From positions 246,655 through 310,654 of IMG/VR virus record IMGVR_UViG_3300047472_000309: a DNA stretch of 64,000 nt. One strand, given 5' to 3'. The notes under the pieces are model-generated. The model saw nothing but the letters and a program-made list of their open reading frames with translations. It ran no database searches and had not been told where the DNA came from. Shown piece after piece: positions 4,166-59,663 of the stretch. The translations under genes and the position numbers were made by a program. The first letter of the stretch is position 1. The number at the start of each line of letters is the position of its first letter.

Positions 4166-5668
4166 TTAATCAACATAGAACGGATCGGTGTTCGGTGTGA
4201 AGGCTGCCGAATACCGCGCGACGTGACTGATACGCAGCTCTTCGATAAAGCCGTTTTGCACCACGGCCGGACCGAAGTACTGGGTCGCCCCGATATAAAG
4301 CCCGTCGCTATTCACACCCCAGTTACCAAAGGTGCTACTGGTCGCGACTGGCACGCCATTCACGTAGAGCGTTGCTACGCCGCTGAGACTCACGAGTGCC
4401 ACGTGGTTCCACGCGCTGACATTCAGCCCCGCCCCATCAATCTCCTGGCTGCCGTCTGCGTTGTAAGCGTAAAGCCGCCCACCATTCACCGACAGCGCAT
4501 TGCCCGAACCCTTTGCCACCAACACCTGATGCGTCGTGATGTCGCTCAGGAAGGTATTGAACTCAATGGTAAAGTCGCCCGTCAATCGCAGTTCCGGTGC
4601 ATCCGGCGTCGTTACGCCGCCGTTGCCCGGAATCAGCAACGACGAACCACCCCAGAGCGACTGCGCAGTGGAAATCGCTGCGCCGCCGTTGGCGGTGAGT
4701 ACCCGCGCCGGATAGGCCTGGTCATGCAAAACAGTCGAGCCATTGATACCGTCAAAGCGCAACAACATCGCGGTCTTCACGGGCGGCAACACGTCGGTGT
4801 TCGCATACGGGTCGATGAGACCATAATGCAGGAACATGTAACCGGAGTAACCCAGCGAGTACGAGTTGTTCAGCTTGACAATCAGTACGTACTGGTAAGC
4901 CGGGTTGGGGGTACAGATCGAATCGCCCAGCGGCACGAAGTCCGACACCAGGCCGTTGTACACCACCGAAGCGCCTTGCAAGCTGTACTGGGCCGCCGCG
5001 GTGTTGGTCCAGTTGTTACCGGTCAATGCTTTCAGATCCAGCGTCAACTGCGTGAGGTCATTGCTTGCCGTCGTGTAGTTCTGCAAATGCGCCTGATACG
5101 GCGTCATGTCGCGGAAGTACGAATACAGCTCACCGAAGGGCTTGCCTGCATCAGTATTCGGATACAACAGACCCGCGAGCGTGGTGCCGGTAGCCACTGT
5201 GCCCAGATCGTAGTTACCAGCTTGGAACGGCAGCGTCACCGAACCAATCCAGCCTAACGAATTGGGCTGCGCAGTCAAGGTGACGGAGCCCGAGCCATCC
5301 GGGCCAATCACCAGCGGCGTGCTGTCGTTCAGGTCGCCTGCAACAAAGTTCAGACCGAAGTTCGCATTGAGCACAGCCCAGAAATCTGCGACCGTGGTCC
5401 AGCCGTTGCCAAAGATCGGCTGGGGCAAGAGGATCGCCAAGTCCGCCAGATTCAGGCGTCGATAATAAACCGTTTGCGCGCCTTGGTACGGCGCATTGAC
5501 ATCGTTGACCGTAATTAGCAGCGACGTGTTTTCAATTCCCTGGGGGTCCTGATAGACGACAGGATTGCCAAAGATGTACTGACTGGGCACGAGTGTCACG
5601 CCCTTGTTCTGAGCCGCAATCGCACTCAGAATCGCAGTCAGTGGTGCGGGATAAAGCGTTTGCGCCAT
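4166..5668 (-). CDS. Tail paralog-family protein with an appended concanavalin A-like/LamG domain
   Basis: Family motifs up to MFLHYG, then a ~200-aa LamG-type tail (LLRFDG, GDFTIE, WNHVALV, LYVNG, GFIEELRIS..ARY). Confidence 0.8.
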   Translation of the reverse strand: MAQTLYPAPLTAILSAIAAQNKGVTLVPSQYIFGNPVVYQDPQGIENTSLLITVNDVNAPYQGAQTVYYRRLNLADLAILLPQPIFGNGWTTVADFWAVLNANFGLNFVAGDLNDSTPLVIGPDGSGSVTLTAQPNSLGWIGSVTLPFQAGNYDLGTVATGTTLAGLLYPNTDAGKPFGELYSYFRDMTPYQAHLQNYTTASNDLTQLTLDLKALTGNNWTNTAAAQYSLQGASVVYNGLVSDFVPLGDSICTPNPAYQYVLIVKLNNSYSLGYSGYMFLHYGLIDPYANTDVLPPVKTAMLLRFDGINGSTVLHDQAYPARVLTANGGAAISTAQSLWGGSSLLIPGNGGVTTPDAPELRLTGDFTIEFNTFLSDITTHQVLVAKGSGNALSVNGGRLYAYNADGSQEIDGAGLNVSAWNHVALVSLSGVATLYVNGVPVATSSTFGNWGVNSDGLYIGATQYFGPAVVQNGFIEELRISHVARYSAAFTPNTDPFYVD

Positions 5669-31317: not shown

Positions 31318-31374
31318 AAAAAAAAAGAGGACAGCATAATCGCCCTCCCCATTATGGGGAGGGCTTATGCCGTC
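31318..31374. terminator. Bidirectional terminator; T9 tract on the minus strand
   Basis: GCCCTCCCCA-TTA-TGGGGAGGGC flanked by GCATAA and TTATGCCG; A9 at 31318-31326. Confidence 0.75.
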
Positions 31375-32307
31375 TTACTCGTTTTTGAGGTTATAGTCCT
31401 TATCGACAAAACCCGCTGTAGCGATGTTCTTAGCATTGCGCATAAACGGGTTCCACCAAAAAAGCCTGCCGCGAACAGACTTAAAGTGACCTCTTACCAG
31501 ATGTGCCCGACGCAGTGCGATGTCGTCACTCGGATTCAAGGCGGCTTCTATGTCTTCTAGCGACTTGTAAACTTTTCTGGTTCGGTAAATATCCAGGACA
31601 TGGTATTCCAGATGCGGATGAAAGACCTTGGGGATCTTTTCTTTTTCTTTACGGCTGGGACGATAAAGATGCAGCTCACTGTTAGAGACATTCATGAACA
31701 GCAACGTCTCAAAAACCGTTTGGATCGCAGCATTCATCACGTTAAGTAGATGAATGTTAAAGTACTCCTGATCAATTGCGACGCCCATCTTGGTGGCGTA
31801 CTCGTGTTCAATCGCACGGTAAGTGGCATTGACGTCGGCTTGACTCATGATGCAGTCCGCGGCATGAGAGTGCGGTCTCGGGTCATCCACGTCGAGCATG
31901 TGCGCGAGCACTCGCATTGCCTGAACATAGCCGTCGCGACTGATGCTGGTGAGCTTGAATTCGTAGATCAGCGTGTCAGCTGTGCCATTGGTAAACGAAC
32001 CGTGCTCCACCAACATGCCCTCTTCGCCGTTTTCAATAAAGAGCATTTCAAACGGCATTTTGACGTAGCGCCGATAGAGATCAATCCGCTTCATGTGCTT
32101 CGCGTCACTTATGTTCTCTTCGCCAGCCCATTGACGACGCATTTGGGTGTAGGCGTCGACGCTAAAGTCAAAGATTTCTTTAGGCGCAATGATTTTCGTT
32201 GCGGCCAGAATCTTCTTTCTAATTTCAAGCTGTTCGGCACGCTCGGTTCGAGCTGTATTCATGTACGGCAGCTCGACATTCTTGGCGATACGTTGTGAAA
32301 GCAACAT
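31375..32307 (-). CDS. Hypothetical early protein with a C-terminal HxVRGH motif
   Basis: 310 aa; PFEMLFIE and RRAHLVRGHFK..FWWNPF; SD AAGGAGA. Confidence 0.7.
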   Translation of the reverse strand: MLLSQRIAKNVELPYMNTARTERAEQLEIRKKILAATKIIAPKEIFDFSVDAYTQMRRQWAGEENISDAKHMKRIDLYRRYVKMPFEMLFIENGEEGMLVEHGSFTNGTADTLIYEFKLTSISRDGYVQAMRVLAHMLDVDDPRPHSHAADCIMSQADVNATYRAIEHEYATKMGVAIDQEYFNIHLLNVMNAAIQTVFETLLFMNVSNSELHLYRPSRKEKEKIPKVFHPHLEYHVLDIYRTRKVYKSLEDIEAALNPSDDIALRRAHLVRGHFKSVRGRLFWWNPFMRNAKNIATAGFVDKDYNLKNE

Positions 32308-32380
32308 CTCATTCTCCTTGTTTTGATCAACTCATTCCAGAACAGCAGGAGGGCGAAGCCTCCCTGTCTTGTTACTCTTC

Positions 32381-32860
32381 TTATTTCGTCATGAAGAGGT
32401 CGCCACACCAGTTCAGGTTATCAACCGTGAGCGAGAACGTGTCGTTTGAGATGTCGATCTTTGTCGAATCACGATCGATGAGGAAGGTAACTTCCATATA
32501 GCCGACATCCGGACCCTTGGCCTTTTCGCGTTCGTAGGCGCGACAGAGATAGAGCAGGTCATCCTTACTGTGCTCGACGCTGACATCCGTAGAACCGTCA
32601 CCGAACGGCTCCACGCTATCGAGGAAGCACGCGAGGAGCACGTCGAGGTATTCGAACGCATCAGTGCTCACGATCAGTGCTGTGCGGCCGCCATCCTCGT
32701 CTTTATCACGCTCGACAGTGCTCATCAAAAACTTCTCTTCGTTGTCGAAGCCTGCACTGTACTCCATGTGTACGCCCGCACATTTAGCAGCACGAATGAT
32801 AAAGCCGTCTTCCGCACGGATGAGTTTGTTCAGCGCATTCAACGCAGCTTGGTTACTCAT
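32381..32860 (-). CDS. Hypothetical early protein
   Basis: 159-aa acidic ORF; SD AGGAGA. Confidence 0.7.
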   Translation of the reverse strand: MSNQAALNALNKLIRAEDGFIIRAAKCAGVHMEYSAGFDNEEKFLMSTVERDKDEDGGRTALIVSTDAFEYLDVLLACFLDSVEPFGDGSTDVSVEHSKDDLLYLCRAYEREKAKGPDVGYMEVTFLIDRDSTKIDISNDTFSLTVDNLNWCGDLFMTK

Positions 32861-32929
32861 GATACTCTCCTGGTTTATTGATCAACTCTAAAGGTCATAG
32901 GCGGGAGGCCGAAGCCTCCCGTTACGTCA

Positions 32930-33625
32930 TTACTGCCACGGCATCCTGGACGGACTATCCGTATCTTTACGCTCGGCTTCGCGACGAGCTGCCGCTGCGT
33001 ACTGTCCTGCCAACACCCTGGTACGACCAGCACTCAACCCAAGCGTAGCCGAGATTGTCAGGTACGTAAAACCGCGGGCATGCAGATCGTGAATCACCTT
33101 ACTCAGCAGCATGGCTGCGCAATGAACCAAGTGATTAGCCCGTTGAACATCGCGACTGAGATAAAGGGTGTTATGCGCCTCGGTCACCCAGGCCCATTGC
33201 CCGTCTGTCAGCACTTGATCGAGCTTGTGCAGCGCACGAATTCGATTCACGTGCTCTTTAAAACGCTGGTGGTAAGTGCGCCGAGCTTTCTCGGTTTTGT
33301 CTTTCGCCATCCGAACACGGGCCTCTTCGATGAGTTCGTTGTACTTCTTCATGGCGAAGCTGCGCACACTCTCGATGTAATCGCGATCGGGATCATGCGG
33401 GCTGTGCTCCCAGTCTCGATCAAACTCAGCGGTCCAGCTCACAGCCAAGTCAAACAGTCCCCGCGAACCATTCAACAAATCCATCAGTGCGCCGTTAAGC
33501 TCGCGGTCCGCTTTGGACCACAGCATGCCGAGCTCCATCGAGATGTCAAAGAGGATCTCTTGCTGGCGTTGCAGATCCAATTCGGTCGGACCTGTCGGCG
33601 CCGGTGATGCATAACCGTTGCTCAT
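32930..33625 (-). CDS. Hypothetical early protein, possible C-terminal HTH
   Basis: Start MSNGY; C-terminal LHARGFTYLTISATLGLSAGRTR resembles a helix-turn-helix. Confidence 0.65.
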   Translation of the reverse strand: MSNGYASPAPTGPTELDLQRQQEILFDISMELGMLWSKADRELNGALMDLLNGSRGLFDLAVSWTAEFDRDWEHSPHDPDRDYIESVRSFAMKKYNELIEEARVRMAKDKTEKARRTYHQRFKEHVNRIRALHKLDQVLTDGQWAWVTEAHNTLYLSRDVQRANHLVHCAAMLLSKVIHDLHARGFTYLTISATLGLSAGRTRVLAGQYAAAARREAERKDTDSPSRMPWQ

Positions 33626-33663
33626 TGTTTTCTCCTTGTTTCTGATCAATTCATTCCACTGCG

Positions 33664-34710
33664 TTAGTCCAGGTACTCGATACGAAAGCTCGTCACCGGG
33701 TAGCCGTCACAACCGTGACTGTTAGCTTCGAGTTCTTCCTGATCCACTACGCCCGGATAGGCTTCATCGAGTTCAGCCACCCGAACGCAATCGCACTCGT
33801 AGTTGCCTTCTTCCCAGTTGTAGATCGCAACACGGCTCTCGACCCCGTAGCCGAAGTCCTTTTGGATCTCGTACTCTTTACCGCGGTAAAGTAAAGTCAG
33901 CGTGGCGACGGTGCGCTTACGCAGCATGGGACCTTCTGCTTCGTCAAACACCAGCGTATTGAAGTGCTGAGGCAAGAGCGTTAGGAACTCCTGCATCTGC
34001 TTCTTGTAAAACTCGCGATCTTCCGCCGAGTCAAAGAACTTCACCGTGTACTGGGGCGTACCGCCGTCGGAGCGCGGTTGGTTGGGCTGACCGTAGCGAC
34101 CTACAAAGAGGGGGTTACCGCAGGCTGCACCATGCCAGCGCAACTGGTATTCCTTCTTGATGTGCTGCTCGGCCGTCTTGAGGAATCGCAGGTCTTCTTC
34201 GAACACCGCCTCGAAGATTTCGCACTCCGGAATTCGATTGGCCACAAAGGTCTTTTCCATGACCCATTGTTTAAAGTCTTCTGGCGGCTCGACATTGTGT
34301 TCGCGCACGTAATGCATGAAACCTTCTGGCCAGCACCAGTCTTCGATACGGAACTCACGATAGCCATTGCTGACCATCTTGTCGCCGTCTTCACTGGCTA
34401 CGCTGCAGCAACGGCACCACGAGGAACCCCGGTAGTGCTCGATGAATTGGTAGATGAACTGCCAACGCGGCATGAGTGGATTGTATTGCCAGAACGGGAT
34501 CGAGGGCTTGCCCGTGATCTGACGGGCTTCGAAGTCATCATTCCAGACCTTCGATGCCTTCTGTACAGTGACCAACTCGTTCCAGTAGACGGCTTCGATC
34601 CAAGCCAGGTTGAGCAGAAACTCGTCTTGTCCTACCCACTTCTCTTTCTGCGCGAGCGGCATCGGAAAGGACGGTTCTGCATCGCTGTACCAAAATCCAA
34701 CCTGTTTCAT
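33664..34710 (-). CDS. Hypothetical early protein with a Cys/His (putative Zn) domain
   Basis: YRGSSWCRCC...NG..E....WCWPEGFMHYVREHNVEPP; C-terminal NYECDC..HGC. Confidence 0.7.
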   Translation of the reverse strand: MKQVGFWYSDAEPSFPMPLAQKEKWVGQDEFLLNLAWIEAVYWNELVTVQKASKVWNDDFEARQITGKPSIPFWQYNPLMPRWQFIYQFIEHYRGSSWCRCCSVASEDGDKMVSNGYREFRIEDWCWPEGFMHYVREHNVEPPEDFKQWVMEKTFVANRIPECEIFEAVFEEDLRFLKTAEQHIKKEYQLRWHGAACGNPLFVGRYGQPNQPRSDGGTPQYTVKFFDSAEDREFYKKQMQEFLTLLPQHFNTLVFDEAEGPMLRKRTVATLTLLYRGKEYEIQKDFGYGVESRVAIYNWEEGNYECDCVRVAELDEAYPGVVDQEELEANSHGCDGYPVTSFRIEYLD

Positions 34711-34747
34711 GTTCTTCTCCTGTAATCAACTCATTCCGTACTGCGTT

Positions 34748-35383
34748 TTAAGCGGCGTACTTGCCGGGGTTGTTTGCCTTGTGTCGACGCACCAGGTGAT
34801 CCCACGGACAGAAACGCCCGTCAGTGAACGCCTGGTTGTAGCGGGCCTTGAATGCCTCAATGAATTCCTCTCCGCCAGCAAGGGCTTCGGCAATCAAGAG
34901 GTCTTCATTGGCCGAAGCTGCCCGCCATGACTTGTTGTCATCGGTGTACTCGTAAGTCCAGTCGTGACGATCGAGCTTTTCCTTGAAGTGATCGATCGGA
35001 CGCATGAACTTCTCCCGCATCTGCGCAATGCGTTGCTTGTACATCTCGGCGGTGTTCTGCTGTGCTTGACGCACGGCGGCGTGCACGATACCCGAGATCA
35101 TCTCTTCACGGGCCTGGTGAAACGCATCCACGCCGCGAGGACCTAACTGCATCGCACGGGCAAAGAGACGGTCTTCCTCTTTGAAGCGCGTGCAGAAGTC
35201 GCAGTAGGAGTTGGTGAAGTTGGACCACTGGTGCTTCTCGAGTGCAGCGACGAACTGCTCGAGGGTCTCAGTCGGTCGACGCGCATCGCGCTTGAGCGCA
35301 GGACGCTCGCTACGCAGCGTGGGTTCAGTACGCTCGACACGGCGGGGATCACGTTGCTGCAGCAATTGGGGGGCACGAATCAT
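34748..35383 (-). CDS. Hypothetical early protein with an internal duplication
   Basis: Start MIRAP; two related units (LEKHQW.. and LDRHDWTYEYTDD). Confidence 0.65.
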   Translation of the reverse strand: MIRAPQLLQQRDPRRVERTEPTLRSERPALKRDARRPTETLEQFVAALEKHQWSNFTNSYCDFCTRFKEEDRLFARAMQLGPRGVDAFHQAREEMISGIVHAAVRQAQQNTAEMYKQRIAQMREKFMRPIDHFKEKLDRHDWTYEYTDDNKSWRAASANEDLLIAEALAGGEEFIEAFKARYNQAFTDGRFCPWDHLVRRHKANNPGKYAA

Positions 35384-35468: not shown

Positions 35469-35476
35469 GTAATATA
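35469..35476 (-). promoter_or_regulatory. phiKZ-type early (virion RNAP) promoter TATATTAC
   Basis: Exact match in an AT-rich gap upstream of the accessory operon. Confidence 0.75.
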
Positions 35477-35534
35477 GATCCGAAAACTTCTAGGATCGAC
35501 GTCATAAAGGCGAGCCCGTAGGCCCGCCTCGCAT

Positions 35535-36383
35535 TTATGCCCCGTAAAGTGACGTGCAAGCGCTGTAGTTATTCGCCATCTTGATGTCGTACTGATTGGC
35601 GGCGTAGTTCGGACCGTTGTAGACCTTCGCGAAGAGCGCCCAGTTACGTGCTTTCAGGGCCGTCTGCAATTGACCGCTCGCGTACTTCTGGCAGAACGAA
35701 ACGAACGCCATTAGGTGTGCGTCTTCAGACTTGCGCATGGCGGTCACAAAGGAACCCACGTCGGCGTAACCACAGAACGAGAAGTTCTCGCCCATGATTT
35801 GGAACAGTCCCCAGGAAGCGGACATCATCGCACATTCCGGGTCAATCGCAAACGCCCGGTTAAAGCGCGGATACTCACCCGCACCACCCGAGTAGCCACC
35901 CGACTGCGGATTGCAGATGTCACTGTTGCCCGCAGCCATCAGCTTATTCACTTGCGCCTGGCCGTACTTCTTCACCAGGTAGCTGTAGAACTTGTGACGC
36001 TCAAAGAGGATGATGCACCGCCCATCGGGCAAGAAGCCCGCGCCGCTGGTTTCAGTCATGCACACAGCCCGCACGGCTGATTGACCAATACCCAACAACT
36101 GCGCGGCATCCACGTAGTCCGGGGTTTGCAGATACTTGCCCGTGATAAACGCATCCAGCAGATTCTGGGTCGATGCGTCGTAAAGACCCGTAGCCGGAAT
36201 GCCTTGCTTGGTCTGGTATTGGGTAAGCGCGGCAATCGAGAGCGGACCAAAGTTACCATCCGGTTTCAATGGAGGCGTCACGCCCTGTTTTTCATTCAGT
36301 GCTTTCTGAATGCCCTTGGTGTAATCGATGTCAAACTGGTTCGGTACCGCAGCACCCAGCTTCACTGGTGTGATCAGAGTCAT
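35535..36383 (-). CDS. Modular endolysin: peptidoglycan-binding domain plus N-acetylmuramidase (DUF3380-type)
   Basis: DGNFGPLS..AL..YQ..QG; ILFERHKF, SASWGLFQIMGEN, WALFAKVYNG; start MTLITP. Confidence 0.9.
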   Translation of the reverse strand: MTLITPVKLGAAVPNQFDIDYTKGIQKALNEKQGVTPPLKPDGNFGPLSIAALTQYQTKQGIPATGLYDASTQNLLDAFITGKYLQTPDYVDAAQLLGIGQSAVRAVCMTETSGAGFLPDGRCIILFERHKFYSYLVKKYGQAQVNKLMAAGNSDICNPQSGGYSGGAGEYPRFNRAFAIDPECAMMSASWGLFQIMGENFSFCGYADVGSFVTAMRKSEDAHLMAFVSFCQKYASGQLQTALKARNWALFAKVYNGPNYAANQYDIKMANNYSACTSLYGA

Positions 36384-36481: not shown

Positions 36482-38164
36482 TTACTTGTCCAGCGTTTGC
36501 AGATGCTCGATCACTGCCTGACGATGCTTCGGCTCGAGCTTCTCGAGAAAGCCGATGACCGAATGAATCACGCGGTGCTCGAACTCTTCTGCTTCTTGCA
36601 TGATCTTGTCGATCAGACCGAGACCGGCTTCCGTCACCTGATGTTCCGGTTCAGCCGGGGTTTCCGGCTCGGGCGGCAGTTCGGGGGTCGGATCGACCGG
36701 CACTTCCGGCGTGACCGGTTGCACCGGGTCCGTCGGTTGCGTCGAATCAGCGGGCGTGTCACCAGCAGCCGGTTGCTCAGCGCCAGTAGCATCGCCACCA
36801 GTCGAAGCATCGGTTGCCGGAGCCGAAGGGTCCGTGGCGTCACCTGCCACCGGATCGGTCGGTTCTTGTGCCGGGGTGTCACCACCTTCTGCCGGGGTAT
36901 CGCTACCTGCGGCTTGGTCGTCGGCGGGCGCGGCCGGTTGTTCCGGGGTCACTGGGTCCGTGGTTTGACCAGCGTCCGCTGCATCGCTGTCTCCAGCCGG
37001 AGCGCCAGTGTCGGCAGCCGGGGCTTCGGGAGCGGCAGGAACGTCACCCGTAGCGACGTCTTGATCAGCAGCCGGAGCTGCCGGTTCGTCCGTCGTTGCT
37101 GCGGGTGCATCGGCCGGAGCTTCAGCCGCCGGATCTTGCACGACAGGTGCAGCATCGGTCGAAGCGCTATCTGCCGCGGCCGGTTGTGCATCAGTGCCCG
37201 CGTCTTGAGCGACAGGGCTATCCGTTGCTGCTCCTGCAGCGTCTGCCGCAGGTTGGTCTTGTTGTGCATCATTCGAATCCGTCGATGCAGCAGGGGCTTC
37301 CGGTTGAACAGCAACCGGGGCCGGGTCCACTGCTACCGGTTGTTCCGGCACGACGCCTGCATTGGCTGCCGGATCGACTTCAGCGGGTGCCGGTTCGACT
37401 TGGTCGTCGGCGGGGGCTGCAGGCACTTCCGGCTGGACTTCGGCCGGTTGGTCTGCAGGTTGTTCAGCGGGCGTGTCCACAGCCGGGGCGACCGGATCGG
37501 TCGACGACGGTTGGGTCTGCTCGATGACTTCTTCGTCCGAGGGCGAGGCGGGGACAGGTTGAACCGCAACCGGTTCATCCGATTCTGCGGGAGCTTGGGC
37601 CGGATCGACAGCTACGGGAGCTGCCGGATCTTGAGCCGCTGTATCGCCAGCGTCGGTTCCCGAAACGGGTTGCGTCTCTTGTCCAGCATCGACTGCCGGG
37701 GTATCCGTCGCTGCAGGTACGTCAGCGACGAGCGGGTCTGCTCCAGCGGGCGCAACTTCAGGCGCCACGACCGGTTCGACCGCGCTGCTATCCACATCTG
37801 CAGAACCTGCTCCTGCGTCAGCGGCGGGTTGTTCTTGCGTTGCATTGGCTTGTACATCGTCCGTTGCCGGAGCGACGTCCGTCGTGGCCGGGGTAGCAGC
37901 TGCGGCGGCTGCGGCGGCTTGCGCGACGTTGGCAGCAGCTTGGGCAACCGTAATCCCTGCCGGTTGGATCAGCCCGTGACTGTCGAGCTCTTCACCTTCT
38001 TGCAGCGAGTACTGTTGCGCTTGGCCGTTGCTATCGAGGTACGTCACGACGATTTGGCTTGCGGACGAAACAGGCGCAGACTGGTCTTGATCTGCGGCTG
38101 GAATGTTATTGGTTTGACCAGCTTCCGCTTGCTGGTCTTGCGTTTGCGCTTGCACGTCCGACAT
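36482..38164 (-). CDS. Acidic Ala/Pro/Asp-rich intrinsically disordered protein
   Basis: Start MSDVQ with SD AGGAGAG; ~450 aa of low complexity; helical C-terminus. Confidence 0.7.
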   Translation of the reverse strand: MSDVQAQTQDQQAEAGQTNNIPAADQDQSAPVSSASQIVVTYLDSNGQAQQYSLQEGEELDSHGLIQPAGITVAQAAANVAQAAAAAAAATPATTDVAPATDDVQANATQEQPAADAGAGSADVDSSAVEPVVAPEVAPAGADPLVADVPAATDTPAVDAGQETQPVSGTDAGDTAAQDPAAPVAVDPAQAPAESDEPVAVQPVPASPSDEEVIEQTQPSSTDPVAPAVDTPAEQPADQPAEVQPEVPAAPADDQVEPAPAEVDPAANAGVVPEQPVAVDPAPVAVQPEAPAASTDSNDAQQDQPAADAAGAATDSPVAQDAGTDAQPAAADSASTDAAPVVQDPAAEAPADAPAATTDEPAAPAADQDVATGDVPAAPEAPAADTGAPAGDSDAADAGQTTDPVTPEQPAAPADDQAAGSDTPAEGGDTPAQEPTDPVAGDATDPSAPATDASTGGDATGAEQPAAGDTPADSTQPTDPVQPVTPEVPVDPTPELPPEPETPAEPEHQVTEAGLGLIDKIMQEAEEFEHRVIHSVIGFLEKLEPKHRQAVIEHLQTLDK

Positions 38165-52308: not shown

Positions 52309-54534
52309 TTAAGCAGCCAGTTTCTGGCGCGGCGTGTAACCTTGTTCGGCCTGCTCGTAGACAAACTTCCAGCCGCCGCATTGCGCGACGTGCCGTACGA
52401 GTTGGAGCGGCTTGGAACCACCCAGTGGCACAATGCTGCGATCGACCACCTTCTCGATGCCGGTGGGCTTGTCAGCCCGCAAGATTTGCTCGAGGATATG
52501 CTTGTGGGTAAACGGATTGTTGTTGCGATCCAGAATATCGGCCGTGATACGTGCGCCTGCATACGACACGGCAATCCGGACTTCCGCTTCGCCCCAAGCT
52601 CGAATCGCCTGCGTACGCGTGGGGGCTGCATACTTGTCGGCATTGGTGACCTGAGAGAGCACCCCAAAATGCTGGAGCTTACCCGAGGACACCGCGGTCC
52701 AGTCATCGGCGATCTTTTCCAGGATGATGATGTAGACCGATGCAATCCGTACTGGCTTCTTGGTCACCACCTTCTTGCCTGAGTTGCCGGTATACGCGAC
52801 CGGACCATACACAGGCGGATACTGCTCCTGGATCGCCCGCACCATCGGGATATACGCCGGGTCGTTTTCCGGTGGCATGAAGAGCTGCAAGCCATCTGCA
52901 TTCTCGATCGTGCCGTCGTGGTGCTTGATGATGTGGATCACACTGGCCAAGTGCTCGACCCGTGGGCGCGTGTACGAGCCCGTCATGAACCAGCTATGTT
53001 GCAACGGGCTCACGATGGCATAGTAGCCCATCAGGTACTCCCAGACTTCGTCGATCAGCTGCGGCTGTTCGATTTCCATCTGCGCAAGCTTCTTCGTGAG
53101 CATGTACTCCGGGTCGGTACGATCCACCCCGAGCTTCGCCACGATGCGCTTCATCACGTCGCGCGAGGCCGCATTGATGTAGGGCTCGTACAGACGACCG
53201 TAGTTCATGCGGTTCACGGTGGACTCACCCGAAACGATGATGTCCGCACGATTGCCATGCTCGTCGATCGGCATTTCATGCGGTTCGCAGATCTTGCAGA
53301 TCACACCCTTGCCGCCGAAGCAGTCCGTCAGCTTAAAGCCGATGGTCGGGGTGATTTCATACTCGATCACGAATTCCACTCGCCAATCATCGAGCGGGGC
53401 CTGACGATAGAGCTTCTTGATGGATTCGCTCGGGCTGGCACTGTTCTTGCCGACCACGCTGAGCGCTTCCACCACCAACCGGTGAAACTCCGGCGACAGG
53501 CGCGGCTTGCCATCCGCATACTTCGACTTCTGCGAGTTATACAGCTGGATGATTTCCTGATAGAACTCGCGGCGTGCGCGGTCATAGCGGGAAGGCTGCG
53601 TATCCATGCCTTCAGGCACATTAGTGTTCTGGTTATTCGCATCGTGATGCACGCGAATATCCACCACCTTGCCACCCGTAGGCACATAGGTCGCCTTGTC
53701 GAACGTGAAGTCCGGCCGCCGCAACGCTGCGGCCGACTGTTCCACCACCGCCAGACTTTCATCGTAGCTGCGCAGCATCATCAGCAGCCCGTCTTCGCGC
53801 ACCATCTCGCCGATGTCCGGAAACGACTTATACTTCTTATAGTCGCCGTACAAGTTCAGCGGAAAGCGCTTGCTGCCCCACTCGACCACGCGGGTTTCGT
53901 ACGTCTTGAAGCTGAAGCGATCGAGCACATCGCGCGAAATCACGATGCCGTCCTCAGCCACACCCGGAATGGACATGTACGCCACGTTACACTGCACGCC
54001 GTACTTGTAGTCACCGTCCGCAGTCACAGACGGGGAATCCAAGAACACCTCACCTTCTTGGATTTCCGCGCCTTGCACGAGCTTACTGCGCGCCGGACGA
54101 CTCACAAACGGAAAACCGAAATACTGATGCTGTGAGCAAAAGCGCGGCATGTTAATCATGCCAATTTCGCTGCCGCCTTCGGTGGTTTTGAAAATCACCA
54201 CTTGTTGCGGATTTTGCCACTGGTCCTGAATGATCGAATCCGCGCCGTAGCTGGTCCGATACCGATCGATCACTTTCAACACCTGGCCCGTCTTGGGCAT
54301 TTTCACGTTCCAGGTATACTTGCCGAACTCACGTTCCATGCCGGTCTGACAGTAACGTGGCGTGGCTCCCTTCACCACCAGCGTCTGACCGATGTGGCTG
54401 GAGAACATCTGCTCCCGCGAAGCAGAGTTGGCCCCTTTCCACGGATTCAACCCACACACACCCAGCAGCTGCCGCAGAAGCTGATTAGGTTCCGGAAGCG
54501 GTTCATAGACCTTCCGTGCTGAATGAACGTTCAT
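52309..54534 (-). CDS. Non-virion RNA polymerase beta subunit, C-terminal part (phiKZ gp71/73-like, uninterrupted)
   Basis: SASREQMFSSH, AEDGIVIS, GFKLTDCFGGKGVI, RMNYGRLYE, RAWGEAE; start MNVHS. Confidence 0.9.
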   Translation of the reverse strand: MNVHSARKVYEPLPEPNQLLRQLLGVCGLNPWKGANSASREQMFSSHIGQTLVVKGATPRYCQTGMEREFGKYTWNVKMPKTGQVLKVIDRYRTSYGADSIIQDQWQNPQQVVIFKTTEGGSEIGMINMPRFCSQHQYFGFPFVSRPARSKLVQGAEIQEGEVFLDSPSVTADGDYKYGVQCNVAYMSIPGVAEDGIVISRDVLDRFSFKTYETRVVEWGSKRFPLNLYGDYKKYKSFPDIGEMVREDGLLMMLRSYDESLAVVEQSAAALRRPDFTFDKATYVPTGGKVVDIRVHHDANNQNTNVPEGMDTQPSRYDRARREFYQEIIQLYNSQKSKYADGKPRLSPEFHRLVVEALSVVGKNSASPSESIKKLYRQAPLDDWRVEFVIEYEITPTIGFKLTDCFGGKGVICKICEPHEMPIDEHGNRADIIVSGESTVNRMNYGRLYEPYINAASRDVMKRIVAKLGVDRTDPEYMLTKKLAQMEIEQPQLIDEVWEYLMGYYAIVSPLQHSWFMTGSYTRPRVEHLASVIHIIKHHDGTIENADGLQLFMPPENDPAYIPMVRAIQEQYPPVYGPVAYTGNSGKKVVTKKPVRIASVYIIILEKIADDWTAVSSGKLQHFGVLSQVTNADKYAAPTRTQAIRAWGEAEVRIAVSYAGARITADILDRNNNPFTHKHILEQILRADKPTGIEKVVDRSIVPLGGSKPLQLVRHVAQCGGWKFVYEQAEQGYTPRQKLAA

Positions 54535-54640: not shown

Positions 54641-54648
54641 GTAATATA
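54641..54648 (-). promoter_or_regulatory. Early promoter TATATTAC upstream of the non-virion RNAP beta gene
   Basis: Exact match. Confidence 0.75.
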
Positions 54649-59655: not shown

Positions 59656-59663
59656 GTAATATA
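59656..59663 (-). promoter_or_regulatory. Early promoter TATATTAC
   Basis: Exact match 53 nt upstream of the gp68-like start. Confidence 0.75.

What the first reader, a model, noticed from the sequence alone, without database searches (positions are those of the whole stretch)
32313..34745. Four unrelated early accessory genes each carry the same leader (GGAATGAGTTGAT...AGGAGA): a cassette-like array
Seen on the minus strand immediately before the starts at 34710, 33625, 32860 and 32307: GCAGTACGGAATGAGTTGATTACAGGAGA, GCAGTGGAATGAATTGATCAGAAACAAGGAGA, AGAGTTGATCAATAAACCAGGAGA and GGAATGAGTTGATCAAAACAAGGAGA. The conservation extends well beyond the SD, and I did not see it before core genes. 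The array starts at one TATATTAC early promoter. Inference: it could be a microhomology/recombination site that captures and shuffles gene cassettes (integron-like), a shared translational operator or RNase site, or an mRNA tag for export from the early infection vesicle or nucleus.
Basis: partly seen in the sequence, partly recalled or inferred. Interest (0 to 1): 0.68.

Follow-up and report, generated by a model that had tools for sequence, protein, structure and literature searches.

The report
Shared leader before swapped early genes
A 12-15 base sequence that looks like a slightly broken ribosome-binding site really is repeated just upstream of the normal ribosome-binding sites of several unrelated early genes of a giant phage. 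Related phages have swapped the genes on either side of it, so it behaves as a regulatory plug and crossover point, not as an integron or an export tag.

Summary
On the minus strand, (G)GAATGA[G/A]TTGAT[C/T]A lies 12-18 nt before the starts at 34710, 33625 and 32307, and AGAGTTGATCAA lies before 32860. The AAACAAGGAGA tail is only this genome's usual extended Shine-Dalgarno (SD). The genome is a 310,654-bp rhizosphere jumbo phage encoding multisubunit RNA polymerase fragments. In it, GA[AG]TTGAT[CT]A occurs 10 times, 7 of them in sense-strand leaders (P about 1e-9). The three sites outside the array include genes shared with Burkholderia phage FLC9, where the core survives although the flanks have diverged. 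The motif is one G-to-T change from ATGAGGTGATYA, the only ribosome-binding site (RBS) of two other genes downstream of early promoters. In FLC9 the T form abuts two start codons. In three close relatives and two metagenome contigs, homology breaks fall at either edge of motif 4, just after motif 1 and at the start of motif 2. The genome has no integrase or resolvase. My best reading (about 0.4) is an SD-derived RNA element at the RBS of early mRNAs, which together with GC hairpins is the conserved junction at which early cassettes are exchanged by homologous recombination, much like T4 PeSLs. There are no RNA data, so a promoter or a protein operator remains possible.

The parts
35469..35497 (-). 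Early promoter heading the array: GATCC, 16 nt, TATATTAC (35476-35469). The transcription start is predicted about 7 nt downstream.
   Evidence: One of about 21 sites of the form GATTS-N16-TATAT(T/A)(A/C)(C/T)-N5-TGAG, nearly all intergenic and on the gene strand. The phiKZ-type early consensus is described in PMC7598289.
35401..35407 (-). Degenerate copy (TTGACTA) in the leader of gene A. Relatives have GTTGATCA (L002) or GAGTTGATCA (FLC9 gp351) at this place.
34748..35383 (-). Gene A, 211 aa, first gene of the early unit. An ORFan.
34723..34737 (-). Motif copy 1, GGAATGAGTTGATTA. It lies 2 nt before the SD AGGAGA and 12 nt before the ATG at 34710.
   Evidence: Kept in L002 and L007. Homology between this genome and L007 ends at 34715.
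33664..34710 (-). Gene 1, 348 aa, with a weak DUF7919 match in the N-terminal part. In L007 and X9 it is replaced by a 200-aa gene homologous only to its C-terminal half.
33643..33657 (-). Motif copy 2, GGAATGAATTGATCA. It is degenerate in L002, which has an extra 100-aa gene inserted just upstream, and is lost in L007.
32930..33625 (-). Gene 2, 231 aa. An ORFan.
32896..32920 (-). GC hairpin with a UUCG loop (32920-32903) followed by CTATG (TATG at 32899-32896). This is one of 67 such hairpin-plus-TATG units in the genome.
   Evidence: Read by analogy with the phiKZ late promoter T(-3)ATG(+1), PMC4666361.
32879..32890 (-). Motif copy 3, TAGAGTTGATCA(A). It has no ATG and no GGAAT. It is identical in L002 and L007.
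32381..32860 (-). Gene 3, 159 aa. An ORFan kept in L002 and L007.
32347..32365 (-). GC hairpin after gene 3. It has no T run and, in this genome, no TATG. L002 has TTATG here.
32324..32338 (-). Motif copy 4, GGAATGAGTTGATCA. It is a conserved island with recombination junctions at both of its edges.
   Evidence: Homology to L002 and L007 stops at 32323/32321. X5 and L045 join other DNA at 32340.
31375..32307 (-). Gene 4, 310 aa, with an AcrVA2-like lead. In L002, L007 and X9 it is replaced by a P-loop ATPase, a NUMOD/I-TevI-type DNA-binding gene and a small gene.
31324..31372 (-). Terminal hairpin plus T run, shared with the convergent polymerase gene. It is the right-hand junction of the slot-4 replacement.
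4167..4173 (-). Weaker copy, (TA)TGTTGATTAA, 16 nt before the start at window 4150.

Best explanation
The 'leader' has two layers. The 3' part (AAACAAGGAGA) is the phage's ordinary extended Shine-Dalgarno. The specific part is a 12-15 nt single-stranded element, (A/C)ATGA[G/A]TTGAT[C/T]A(A), with TTGATYA invariant. It lies on the sense strand 2-16 nt upstream of the real SD of about 8-10 genes that follow phiKZ-type early promoters. I read it as a Shine-Dalgarno-derived element of early-mRNA leaders that works on the RNA at the ribosome-binding region. Most likely it is a second, weakened docking site for the 3' tail of 16S rRNA (GAG plus UGAUC pairing), acting as a standby site or stabiliser. 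Because selection keeps it while the genes around it turn over, it forms, with the GC hairpins, the short conserved islands at which co-infecting relatives exchange early cassettes by ordinary homologous recombination. This is PeSL-like modular shuffling with no dedicated recombinase. Shown: the motif, its enrichment, its strand and position, its conservation, its kinship to true RBSs, and the breakpoints. Inferred: RNA-level action, pairing with 16S, and a causal role in recombination.
For: Enrichment and position. The composite TTGATYA..RGGA..ATG has 12, 11 and 9 hits in this genome and two close relatives, against 0 in reversed-pattern controls. TGARTTGATYA is found only on the gene strand in G001 and G002. 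Footprints in FLC9: the gp140 leader keeps GAGTTGATTA. The gp217 leader (protein 42% identical) keeps AGTTGATCAA at the same distance from the predicted TSS and from the ATG, while the rest of the UTR has diverged. Kinship to RBSs: ATGAGGTGATYA, one G for T, lies 2 nt before the ATG of genes at genome 134662 and 232172 and is their only SD. In FLC9, GAGTTGATCA abuts the annotated starts of gp149 and gp351. The predicted duplex with the 16S tail is -9.4 kcal/mol, as strong as the real SDs of the same leaders, and the C/T variation keeps a pair as C-G or U-G. The motif is mostly unpaired and shows no shared fold. Copies 5 and 7 lie about 36 nt downstream of a predicted early TSS, where a second promoter is not needed. 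Junctions.
Against: No RNA run holds this phage, so nothing is shown at the RNA level. The host and its 16S tail are assumed, not known. Pairing energy alone is unremarkable: about the top 4% of random 14-mers and the top 6% of distal leader windows. GAA variants drop to -6.1. The invariant first T and final A are not explained by 16S pairing, which hints at another reader of the sequence. Single copies can decay: gene 2 in L007 and L002, gene A here. Breakpoints at gene boundaries are expected for any viable replacement, so coincidence with the motif does not prove that the motif is the recombination substrate. One replacement in G001 breaks 50 nt away from its motif.
Confidence: 0.4

Rival explanations
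1. The motif is a start-site-overlapping internal promoter or initiator for one of the phage's multisubunit RNA polymerases. It would give selected early genes their own (middle or delayed-early) transcripts with short leaders, so that hairpin plus motif would be a true terminator-promoter cassette.
For: phiKZ nvRNAP recognises T(-3)ATG(+1) at the start site, and sequence downstream of the start matters (PMC4666361). Here 12-16 of 21 early promoters carry each letter of TGAG 5 nt after TATATTAC, four of them TGAGTT and one TGAGTTGA. Hairpins precede 3 of 7 copies. The hairpin-TATG units continue as CCGTYGAT, which loosely resembles ATGAGTTGAT.
Against: No copy has T at -3. The ATG is missing in copies 3 and 7 and in both FLC9 orthologous leaders. 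Copies 5 and 7 lie 36 nt after a predicted early TSS. In FLC9 gp149 and gp351 the motif touches the ATG, so a transcript starting in it would have almost no leader. Copies 1 and 2 lie in 37-38 nt gene junctions with no hairpin. No sigma-70-like promoter is present.
Confidence: 0.2
2. The motif is the RNA operator of a phage-encoded protein, either a RegA-like translational repressor or activator of a subset of early mRNAs, or the target of a sequence-specific endoribonuclease that cuts polycistronic early RNA ahead of each cistron.
For: Conserved letters go beyond what 16S pairing needs (5' AT, the internal T, the 3' A). The motif is single-stranded. It always lies within the region a 30S subunit covers. 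Only a subset of genes downstream of early promoters carries it. The G variant overlaps the RBS itself. GA|AUU in copies 2 and 7 fits the loose RNase E preference (my own knowledge).
Against: No candidate factor was found. A RegA Pfam search was blank, but its control was uninformative. The 5' AT is not kept in FLC9. No RNA ends are available.
Confidence: 0.2
3. The motif is a functionless relic: a fossil of an old RBS or leader that has been copied along with cassettes and looks conserved only because the genomes are close.
For: Copies 1 and 2 share extra flank (ACGCAGT), as local copying would produce. Single copies are lost in relatives without loss of the gene. Most conservation data come from genomes with 91-96% identical flanking core DNA, such as the adjacent polymerase gene.
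Against: The core survives in two FLC9 leaders whose flanks and proteins have diverged strongly (42% aa identity). It stays intact in array segments that are only 77-83% identical. Its strand and its distance to the SD are tightly constrained.
Confidence: 0.1
4. The motif is a dedicated site-specific recombination site, giving integron-like gene capture.
For: Breakpoints fall at the motif edges. TTGATCAA is an 8-bp palindrome. One promoter heads a row of promoterless cassettes.
Against: The genome has no Phage_integrase or Resolvase domain, and the controls for both searches worked. There are no attC-like imperfect palindromes. The palindrome is not over-represented once its sub-words are allowed for (34 observed, 35.6 expected). 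The hairpins are plain GC stems with UUCG loops. One replacement breaks away from the motif.
Confidence: 0.03
5. The motif is an mRNA tag for export from an early infection vesicle or a phage nucleus.
For: None beyond the location in early units. The phage does encode phiKZ-type RNAP fragments.
Against: Only about 8-10 genes carry it. A nucleus shell gene was not looked for. No such tag is known. A position tied to the SD points to translation.
Confidence: 0.02

Closest known systems
PeSLs (promoter-early stem-loops) of T4-type phages (Arbiol et al. 2010, PMC2839356; Comeau et al. 2014, PMC4122927)
   Same: Both are short, repeated regulatory sequences between non-essential ORFan genes of hyperplastic early regions. 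In both, stem-loops lie next to them, and insertions, deletions and replacements between close relatives end at them. Exchange is by homologous recombination, with no recombinase.
   Different: PeSLs are strong sigma-70 early promoters plus terminators and were tested for both functions. Here there is no sigma-70 promoter, the phage uses its own RNAPs, and the repeated element hugs the SD and resembles an SD. Two of the four junctions have no stem-loop. No mini-circles were seen.
STAB-SD / SD-like 5' stabilisers and ribosome standby sites (B. thuringiensis cryIIIA; phage SP82 early RNA; de Smit and van Duin standby model) - from my own knowledge, no paper retrieved
   Same: An SD-like sequence in a leader, too far from the AUG to place it in the P site, binds the 16S 3' tail and so protects the mRNA or feeds the true RBS.
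   Different: Those elements are polypurine GGAGG-type sequences and usually lie near the 5' end. This one is GAG-U-UGAUC with a fixed mismatch, and it is repeated inside a polycistronic unit. Binding is untested.
T4 RegA translational operators
   Same: A subset of early mRNAs shares an RNA site at the RBS that lets one factor control them together.
   Different: RegA sites are AU-rich, poorly conserved and overlap the AUG. No RegA homologue was found (control uninformative).
phiKZ-type promoters (early TATATTAC; late T(-3)ATG(+1); PMC4666361, PMC7598289)
   Same: Same phage type. TATATTAC is used here too. The motif contains ATG followed by AG, like the TGAG at the predicted early start sites.
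   Different: T(-3) is absent and the ATG is not conserved across copies or in FLC9. The motif lies inside 5' UTRs.
Integron attC/attI cassette arrays
   Same: A row of unrelated promoterless genes behind one promoter, each preceded by a repeated site.
   Different: There is no integrase and no attC structure, and each gene keeps its own SD. Junctions are explained by homology.

Membership tests
PeSL-type mobile regulatory cassette | Repeated near-identical intergenic unit in a hyperplastic region of non-essential ORFan genes | tested here: met
   There are 4-5 copies in a 4-kb array of unrelated ORFans. The locus between the endolysin and the polymerase holds 1 to 8 genes in different relatives.
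PeSL-type mobile regulatory cassette | Indel and replacement breakpoints between close relatives coincide with the unit | tested here: met
   Breaks fall at 34715, 33662/33653, 32321-32323, 32340 and 31372. One exception lies 50 nt away.
PeSL-type mobile regulatory cassette | The unit is a stem-loop terminator plus an early promoter | tested here: inconclusive
   Stem-loops precede copies 3 and 4 only. There is no sigma-70 promoter. Promoter activity for the phage RNAPs cannot be tested without RNA data.
PeSL-type mobile regulatory cassette | Mini-circles formed by exchange between neighbouring units | tested here: not met
   The one back-joint in X5 is explained by a linear arrangement seen in contig L045. 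Contigs are a weak test.
Integron | IntI tyrosine recombinase (or any site-specific recombinase) encoded with the array | tested here: not met
   PF00589 and PF00239 have no match in the whole genome, and the controls were positive.
Integron | attC: imperfect inverted repeats of 57-141 bp at cassette ends | tested here: not met
   Only an 8-bp palindrome and plain GC hairpins with UUCG loops are present.
Shine-Dalgarno / SD-like docking element | Complementarity to the 3' tail of 16S rRNA | tested here: inconclusive
   Eight pairs with one mismatch, -9.4 kcal/mol, equal to the real SDs of these leaders but only in the top 4-6% of controls. The tail sequence is assumed from conserved proteobacterial 16S.
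Shine-Dalgarno / SD-like docking element | Acts as the RBS when placed 5-9 nt before a start codon | tested here: met
   By position only. The G variant is the sole SD of two genes in this genome. The T form is the sole SD-like sequence of FLC9 gp149 and gp351. In the four copies of the finding it lies too far away and a separate SD follows.
Shine-Dalgarno / SD-like docking element | 30S binding, or stabilisation or enhancement of the mRNA | not testable with these tools
   No RNA or ribosome data exist for this phage.
phiKZ-type late (nvRNAP) promoter | T(-3)A(-2)T(-1)G(+1), all four positions required | tested here: not met
   The copies read AATG or CATG in 5 of 7, and TAGA or CTTG in the others. 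The FLC9 orthologues read GACG and CTAG. The requirement is from PMC4666361.
T4 RegA regulon | RegA-family repressor encoded by the phage | tested here: inconclusive
   PF01818 was blank, but the control genomes cannot ring for a phage family.
Known RNA families (Rfam) | Match to a curated covariance model | tested here: not met
   Only two chance-level hits, E 0.22 and 0.68.

The most novel reading that the evidence does not exclude
The motif is a clade-specific 'early-leader code': a portable RNA tag read by a phage factor, or by ribosomes the phage has taken over, that gives a chosen subset of early mRNAs privileged translation or stability. It would at the same time work as a universal plug, so that any incoming ORF recombined behind it is at once expressed early. 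In function this would be an integrase-free gene-capture system for counter-defence cassettes in nucleus-type jumbo phages.
Probability: 0.12. Interest if true: 0.8.

Novelty: new variant of a known kind. Interest (0 to 1): 0.5.

Why it matters
Jumbo phages that carry their own RNA polymerases have well-described promoters but almost no described signals after transcription. Here a short, selected element next to the SD marks a subset of early genes. One of them is an AcrVA2-like candidate anti-defence gene. The same element lies exactly where close relatives have swapped genes. If it is confirmed, it gives a handle on two things. One is how these phages tune early translation. The other is how they shuffle early accessory and counter-defence genes without a recombinase, which would extend the T4 PeSL idea to a different phage lineage and a different kind of regulatory element. 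It would also be a practical landing pad for engineering early-expressed cargo into FLC9-like phages.

Tried and rejected
- **RNA evidence:** no public RNA run holds the region. I laid four DNA runs on 5,401 letters instead.
- **More relatives:** megablast found nothing in GenBank phages. Only FLC9 appeared with distant blastn and tblastn. IMG/VR gave three close relatives and one distant one. A metagenome scan with gene 3 found nothing. A scan with the polymerase found only 40-59% relatives that lack the motif.
- **Global palindrome signal:** rejected. TTGATCAA occurs 34 times against 35.6 expected from its sub-words, and GATC is not unusual.
- **Conserved RNA fold or SD sequestration:** none found. 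There is no Rfam family.
- **Host promoters:** no sigma-70 promoter. By eye I rejected sigma-54 spacing, IHF, FNR and DnaA boxes.
- **Two-codon mini-ORF (ATG AGT TGA):** present in 6 of 7 copies but absent from copy 3 and from both FLC9 orthologous leaders, and it has no SD of its own. Rejected as the conserved feature.
- **16S 5' end:** the resemblance to AGAGTTTGATCA needs gaps. I take it as a by-product of the UGAUCA palindrome.
- **CsrA/RsmA sites:** the GGA occurs only in copies 1, 2 and 4.
- **Homing-endonuclease target:** unlikely. The genomes that carry the NUMOD gene keep the motif intact, and that gene lacks a recognisable catalytic domain.
- **Recombinases and RegA:** all searches blank.
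- **Gene 4:** no PDB relative by sequence or by fold. PF26125 is not in the local Pfam library.
- **Leader motifs in another jumbo phage that carries a gene-4 homologue:** none.
- **Not used:** the large representative-protein search, because the claim does not rest on absence of relatives. No alternative genetic code was used.
Full report
**What the window is.** The window is bases 246655-310654 of a complete 310,654-bp virus record with direct terminal repeats and 56% G+C. Only rhizosphere and soil metagenome DNA runs hold it, and no RNA run does. It encodes fragments of multisubunit RNA polymerase beta and beta' (PF00562 at genome 299818-300039, PF00623 at 1665-1877). It carries about 21 intergenic sites of the form GATTS-N16-TATAT(T/A)(A/C)(C/T)-N5-TGAG, almost all on the gene-dense minus strand. 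TATATTAC is the phiKZ-type early promoter core, centred near -10 (PMC7598289). The nearest named relative is Burkholderia phage FLC9, 321,833 bp. IMG/VR holds three close relatives. These are G001 (locus L002), G002 (locus L007) and a fragment (L001), whose polymerase next to the array is 97-99% identical in protein. My own rough gene caller gives 360 genes, 319 of them on the minus strand.

**The observation.** All four strings are present as described. The 15-mer GGAATGAGTTGATCA matches at 32338-32324 (0 mismatches), 33657-33643 (1) and 34737-34723 (1). Copy 3 shares only (A)GAGTTGATCAA, at 32888-32879. The five array proteins are mutually unrelated and have no clear Pfam or PHROG family. 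The early promoter at 35476-35469 heads the unit.

**Statistics and the full family.**
- GA[AG]TTGAT[CT]A occurs 10 times on both strands (2.3 expected). Seven hits lie in sense-strand windows -50 to -5 of start codons, which are 2.6% of positions (P 9e-10).
- TGA[AG]TTGAT[CT]A occurs 6 times, all in such windows.
- Besides the array, full copies precede a 117-aa gene (genome 149884), a 553-aa gene (187356) and a 92-aa gene (234687). Weaker copies precede genes at 250804 and 110608, and gene A.
- The composite TTGATYA..RGGA..ATG has 12, 11 and 9 hits in this genome, G001 and G002. It has 2-3 hits in the distant G003 and in FLC9, and none in the reversed controls.
- In G001 and G002 every TGARTTGATYA lies on the gene strand.
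- The distance from the motif to the ATG is 12-27 nt, and to the SD 2-16 nt.
- All seven full copies lie within 8 genes downstream of an early promoter (P 0.003). Four of the seven are one array, so this link is only moderate.

**Conservation.** The sites are orthologously kept in G001 and G002, including in array segments that are only 77-83% identical in DNA. FLC9 is more telling. Its orthologue of the 117-aa gene (gp140) has hairpin - cgacGAGTTGATTA - GGAG - ATG. Its orthologue of the 553-aa gene (gp217, 42% protein identity) has TATATAAC-N5-TGAG, then AGTTGATCAA at about +36, then AAAGGAG and the ATG. The rest of that UTR is unalignable. This is a phylogenetic footprint of RTTGATYA. The 5' AT is not kept in FLC9. 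Single copies can decay: gene 2 in L002 and L007, and gene A in this genome.

**What the motif resembles.** Within one mismatch of ATGAGTTGATYA there are 11 sites in the genome.
- Five are the leader copies.
- Two read ATGAGGTGATYA and lie 2 nt before the ATG of genes at 134662 and 232172. One of these is the first gene after an early promoter. In both, this sequence is the only SD.
- In FLC9 the T form itself abuts the annotated starts of gp149 and gp351, both first genes after early promoters.

AAUGAGUUGAUC differs from the perfect complement of the conserved 16S tail (AAGGAGGUGAUC, established knowledge) by two G-to-U changes. The predicted duplex is GAG plus UGAUC at -9.4 kcal/mol, as strong as the true SDs in the same leaders (-6.9 to -9.3). 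The C/T variation keeps a C-G or U-G pair. Taken alone this energy is not exceptional: about the top 4% of random 14-mers and the top 6% of distal leader windows. GAA variants are weaker. The motif is mostly unpaired and has no common fold, no Rfam match and no sigma-70 promoter.

**Cassette behaviour.** This genome was aligned to L007 and L002.

| Comparison | Homology ends | Homology resumes |
|---|---|---|
| vs L007 | 34715, after motif 1 and its SD | 33568, inside gene 2 |
| vs L007 | 32321, right after motif 4 | 31373, terminal hairpin |
| vs L002 | 33662, stop of gene 1 | 33653, start of motif 2 |
| vs L002 | 32323, right after motif 4 | 31372, terminal hairpin |

- Between the first L002 pair, L002 carries an extra hairpin-TATG-SD-gene unit of about 100 aa.
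- Behind the same hairpin and motif 4, this genome has the 310-aa gene 4. L002, L007 and the X9 contig instead have a P-loop ATPase, a NUMOD/I-TevI-type DNA-binding gene and a small gene.
- In L007 and X9, slot 1 holds a 200-aa gene homologous only to the C-terminal half of gene 1.
- A Logan contig (L045) carries gene 4 at 96% identity with the same motif-to-ATG leader, but behind a different hairpin and a 226-aa I-TevI-DNA-binding gene. The junction is at 32340, the 5' edge of motif 4. The X5 joint shows the same arrangement and may be the same data.
- Sequences therefore differ on both sides of motif 4 in different strains. This is the pattern expected if the motif, with the hairpins, is the shared patch at which exchange occurs.
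- In G001 a different gene with its own TTGATCAAGGAG leader replaces the gene at genome 234204. There the break lies 50 nt from the motif, so the motif also travels with cassettes.
- The locus between the endolysin and the convergent polymerase holds 1 gene in a 291-kb relative, 4 in FLC9, 5 here and 7-8 in L002 and L007.
- The genome has no tyrosine or serine recombinase.

**Mechanism.** The element is sense-specific and single-stranded. It is tied to the SD rather than to hairpins or promoters. It lies inside 5' UTRs downstream of predicted start sites, and it is one substitution from sequences that serve as RBSs. I therefore favour action on the RNA at the ribosome-binding region, most simply as an auxiliary, weakened SD-type docking site (standby or stabiliser type), at confidence about 0.4.

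Two rivals stay alive because no RNA ends are available, each at about 0.2.
- A start-site-overlapping promoter for the phage RNAPs. It is supported by the TGAG(TT) at early start regions and by the phiKZ TATG precedent. It is weakened by the missing T(-3), the non-conserved ATG and the FLC9 copies that touch the ATG.
- A protein operator or endonuclease site. It is supported by conserved letters that rRNA pairing does not need.

A functionless relic (0.1) is hard to square with the FLC9 footprints. An integron-like site (0.03) and an export tag (0.02) have no support.

**Comparison with what is known.** The evolutionary behaviour matches T4-type PeSLs (PMC2839356, PMC4122927): repeated regulatory units in hyperplastic early regions at which close relatives differ by indels and replacements. 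It is not a PeSL in the strict sense. There is no sigma-70 promoter, half of the junctions lack a stem-loop, and the repeated element is SD-like. Conserved-sequence terminator hairpins are already known in phiKZ and 201phi2-1 (PMC11512511), so the hairpins here are ordinary for this phage type. I rate the finding a new variant of a known kind.

**Limits.** Gene calls are home-made. The host is unknown. All functional statements are inferred from sequence. The close relatives are few and not independent. The L045 and X5 evidence may be a single observation.

Noticed in passing
window 31375-32307 (-): Gene 4 of the array is an AcrVA2-like candidate. The ESM-Atlas feature score is 0.98 to clusters carrying PF26125, and the shape match is TM 0.60 to the same cluster. 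The AlphaFold model has pLDDT 80. It has no PDB relative. There are 45 homologues at 26-39% identity in phage contigs, and in a 291-kb relative it is the only gene between the endolysin and the polymerase.
   Followed up: partly
L002 13628-14164; L007 13054-12512; L045 45-725: The alternative slot-4 cassette in relatives carries a NUMOD/I-TevI-DNA-binding, homing-endonuclease-like gene (phrog_314, PF20987) with no recognisable catalytic domain, next to a P-loop ATPase. Such genes could drive cassette turnover by local breaks.
   Followed up: partly
whole genome; in the window e.g. 32896-32920 (-) and 31324-31372: There are 67 GC hairpins followed by YTATGCCGTYGAT. Many are palindromic (GGCATAR - stem-loop - YTATGCC) and so are counted on both strands. 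They are probably terminator plus phiKZ-like TATG late-promoter units. The same kind of unit occurs in an unrelated 256-kb phage contig, L046.
   Followed up: partly
whole genome; window 35469-35497, 54641-54648, 59656-59663 (-): The early promoters are bipartite: a GATTS element 16 nt upstream of TATATTAC, and a conserved TGAG 5 nt downstream that probably marks the start site. Variants TATATTCT and TATATAAC also occur.
   Followed up: partly
genome 134662 and 232172 (outside the window): Two genes downstream of early promoters use a 9-nt perfect extended SD (GAGGTGATY) embedded in ATGAGGTGATYA, 2 nt before the ATG. It is the same in G001 and G002.
   Followed up: yes
whole genome, e.g. genome 132118, 162574, 65308: A second recurrent leader, TTACAATTGAAACAAGGA, lies just upstream of the SD of other genes. 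It shares AATTGA..AACAAGG with copy 2 of the motif. Its meaning is unknown.
   Followed up: no
window 36482-38164 (-): A 560-aa protein that is extremely rich in Ala, Pro, Asp and Gln, with low-complexity repeats, lies just upstream of the endolysin gene (window 35535-36383).
   Followed up: no
window 33664-34710 (-) versus L007 15906-15304: Gene 1 seems to have two domains: an N-terminal part with a weak DUF7919 match and a C-terminal part. The L007 and X9 allele keeps only a diverged C-terminal domain behind the same motif.
   Followed up: partly
window 53164-53385 (-): An RNAP beta-like fragment (PF00562, in a 769-aa frame) lies directly downstream of the early promoter at window 54641-54648. 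This fits non-virion RNAP subunits being early genes, as in phiKZ.
   Followed up: no
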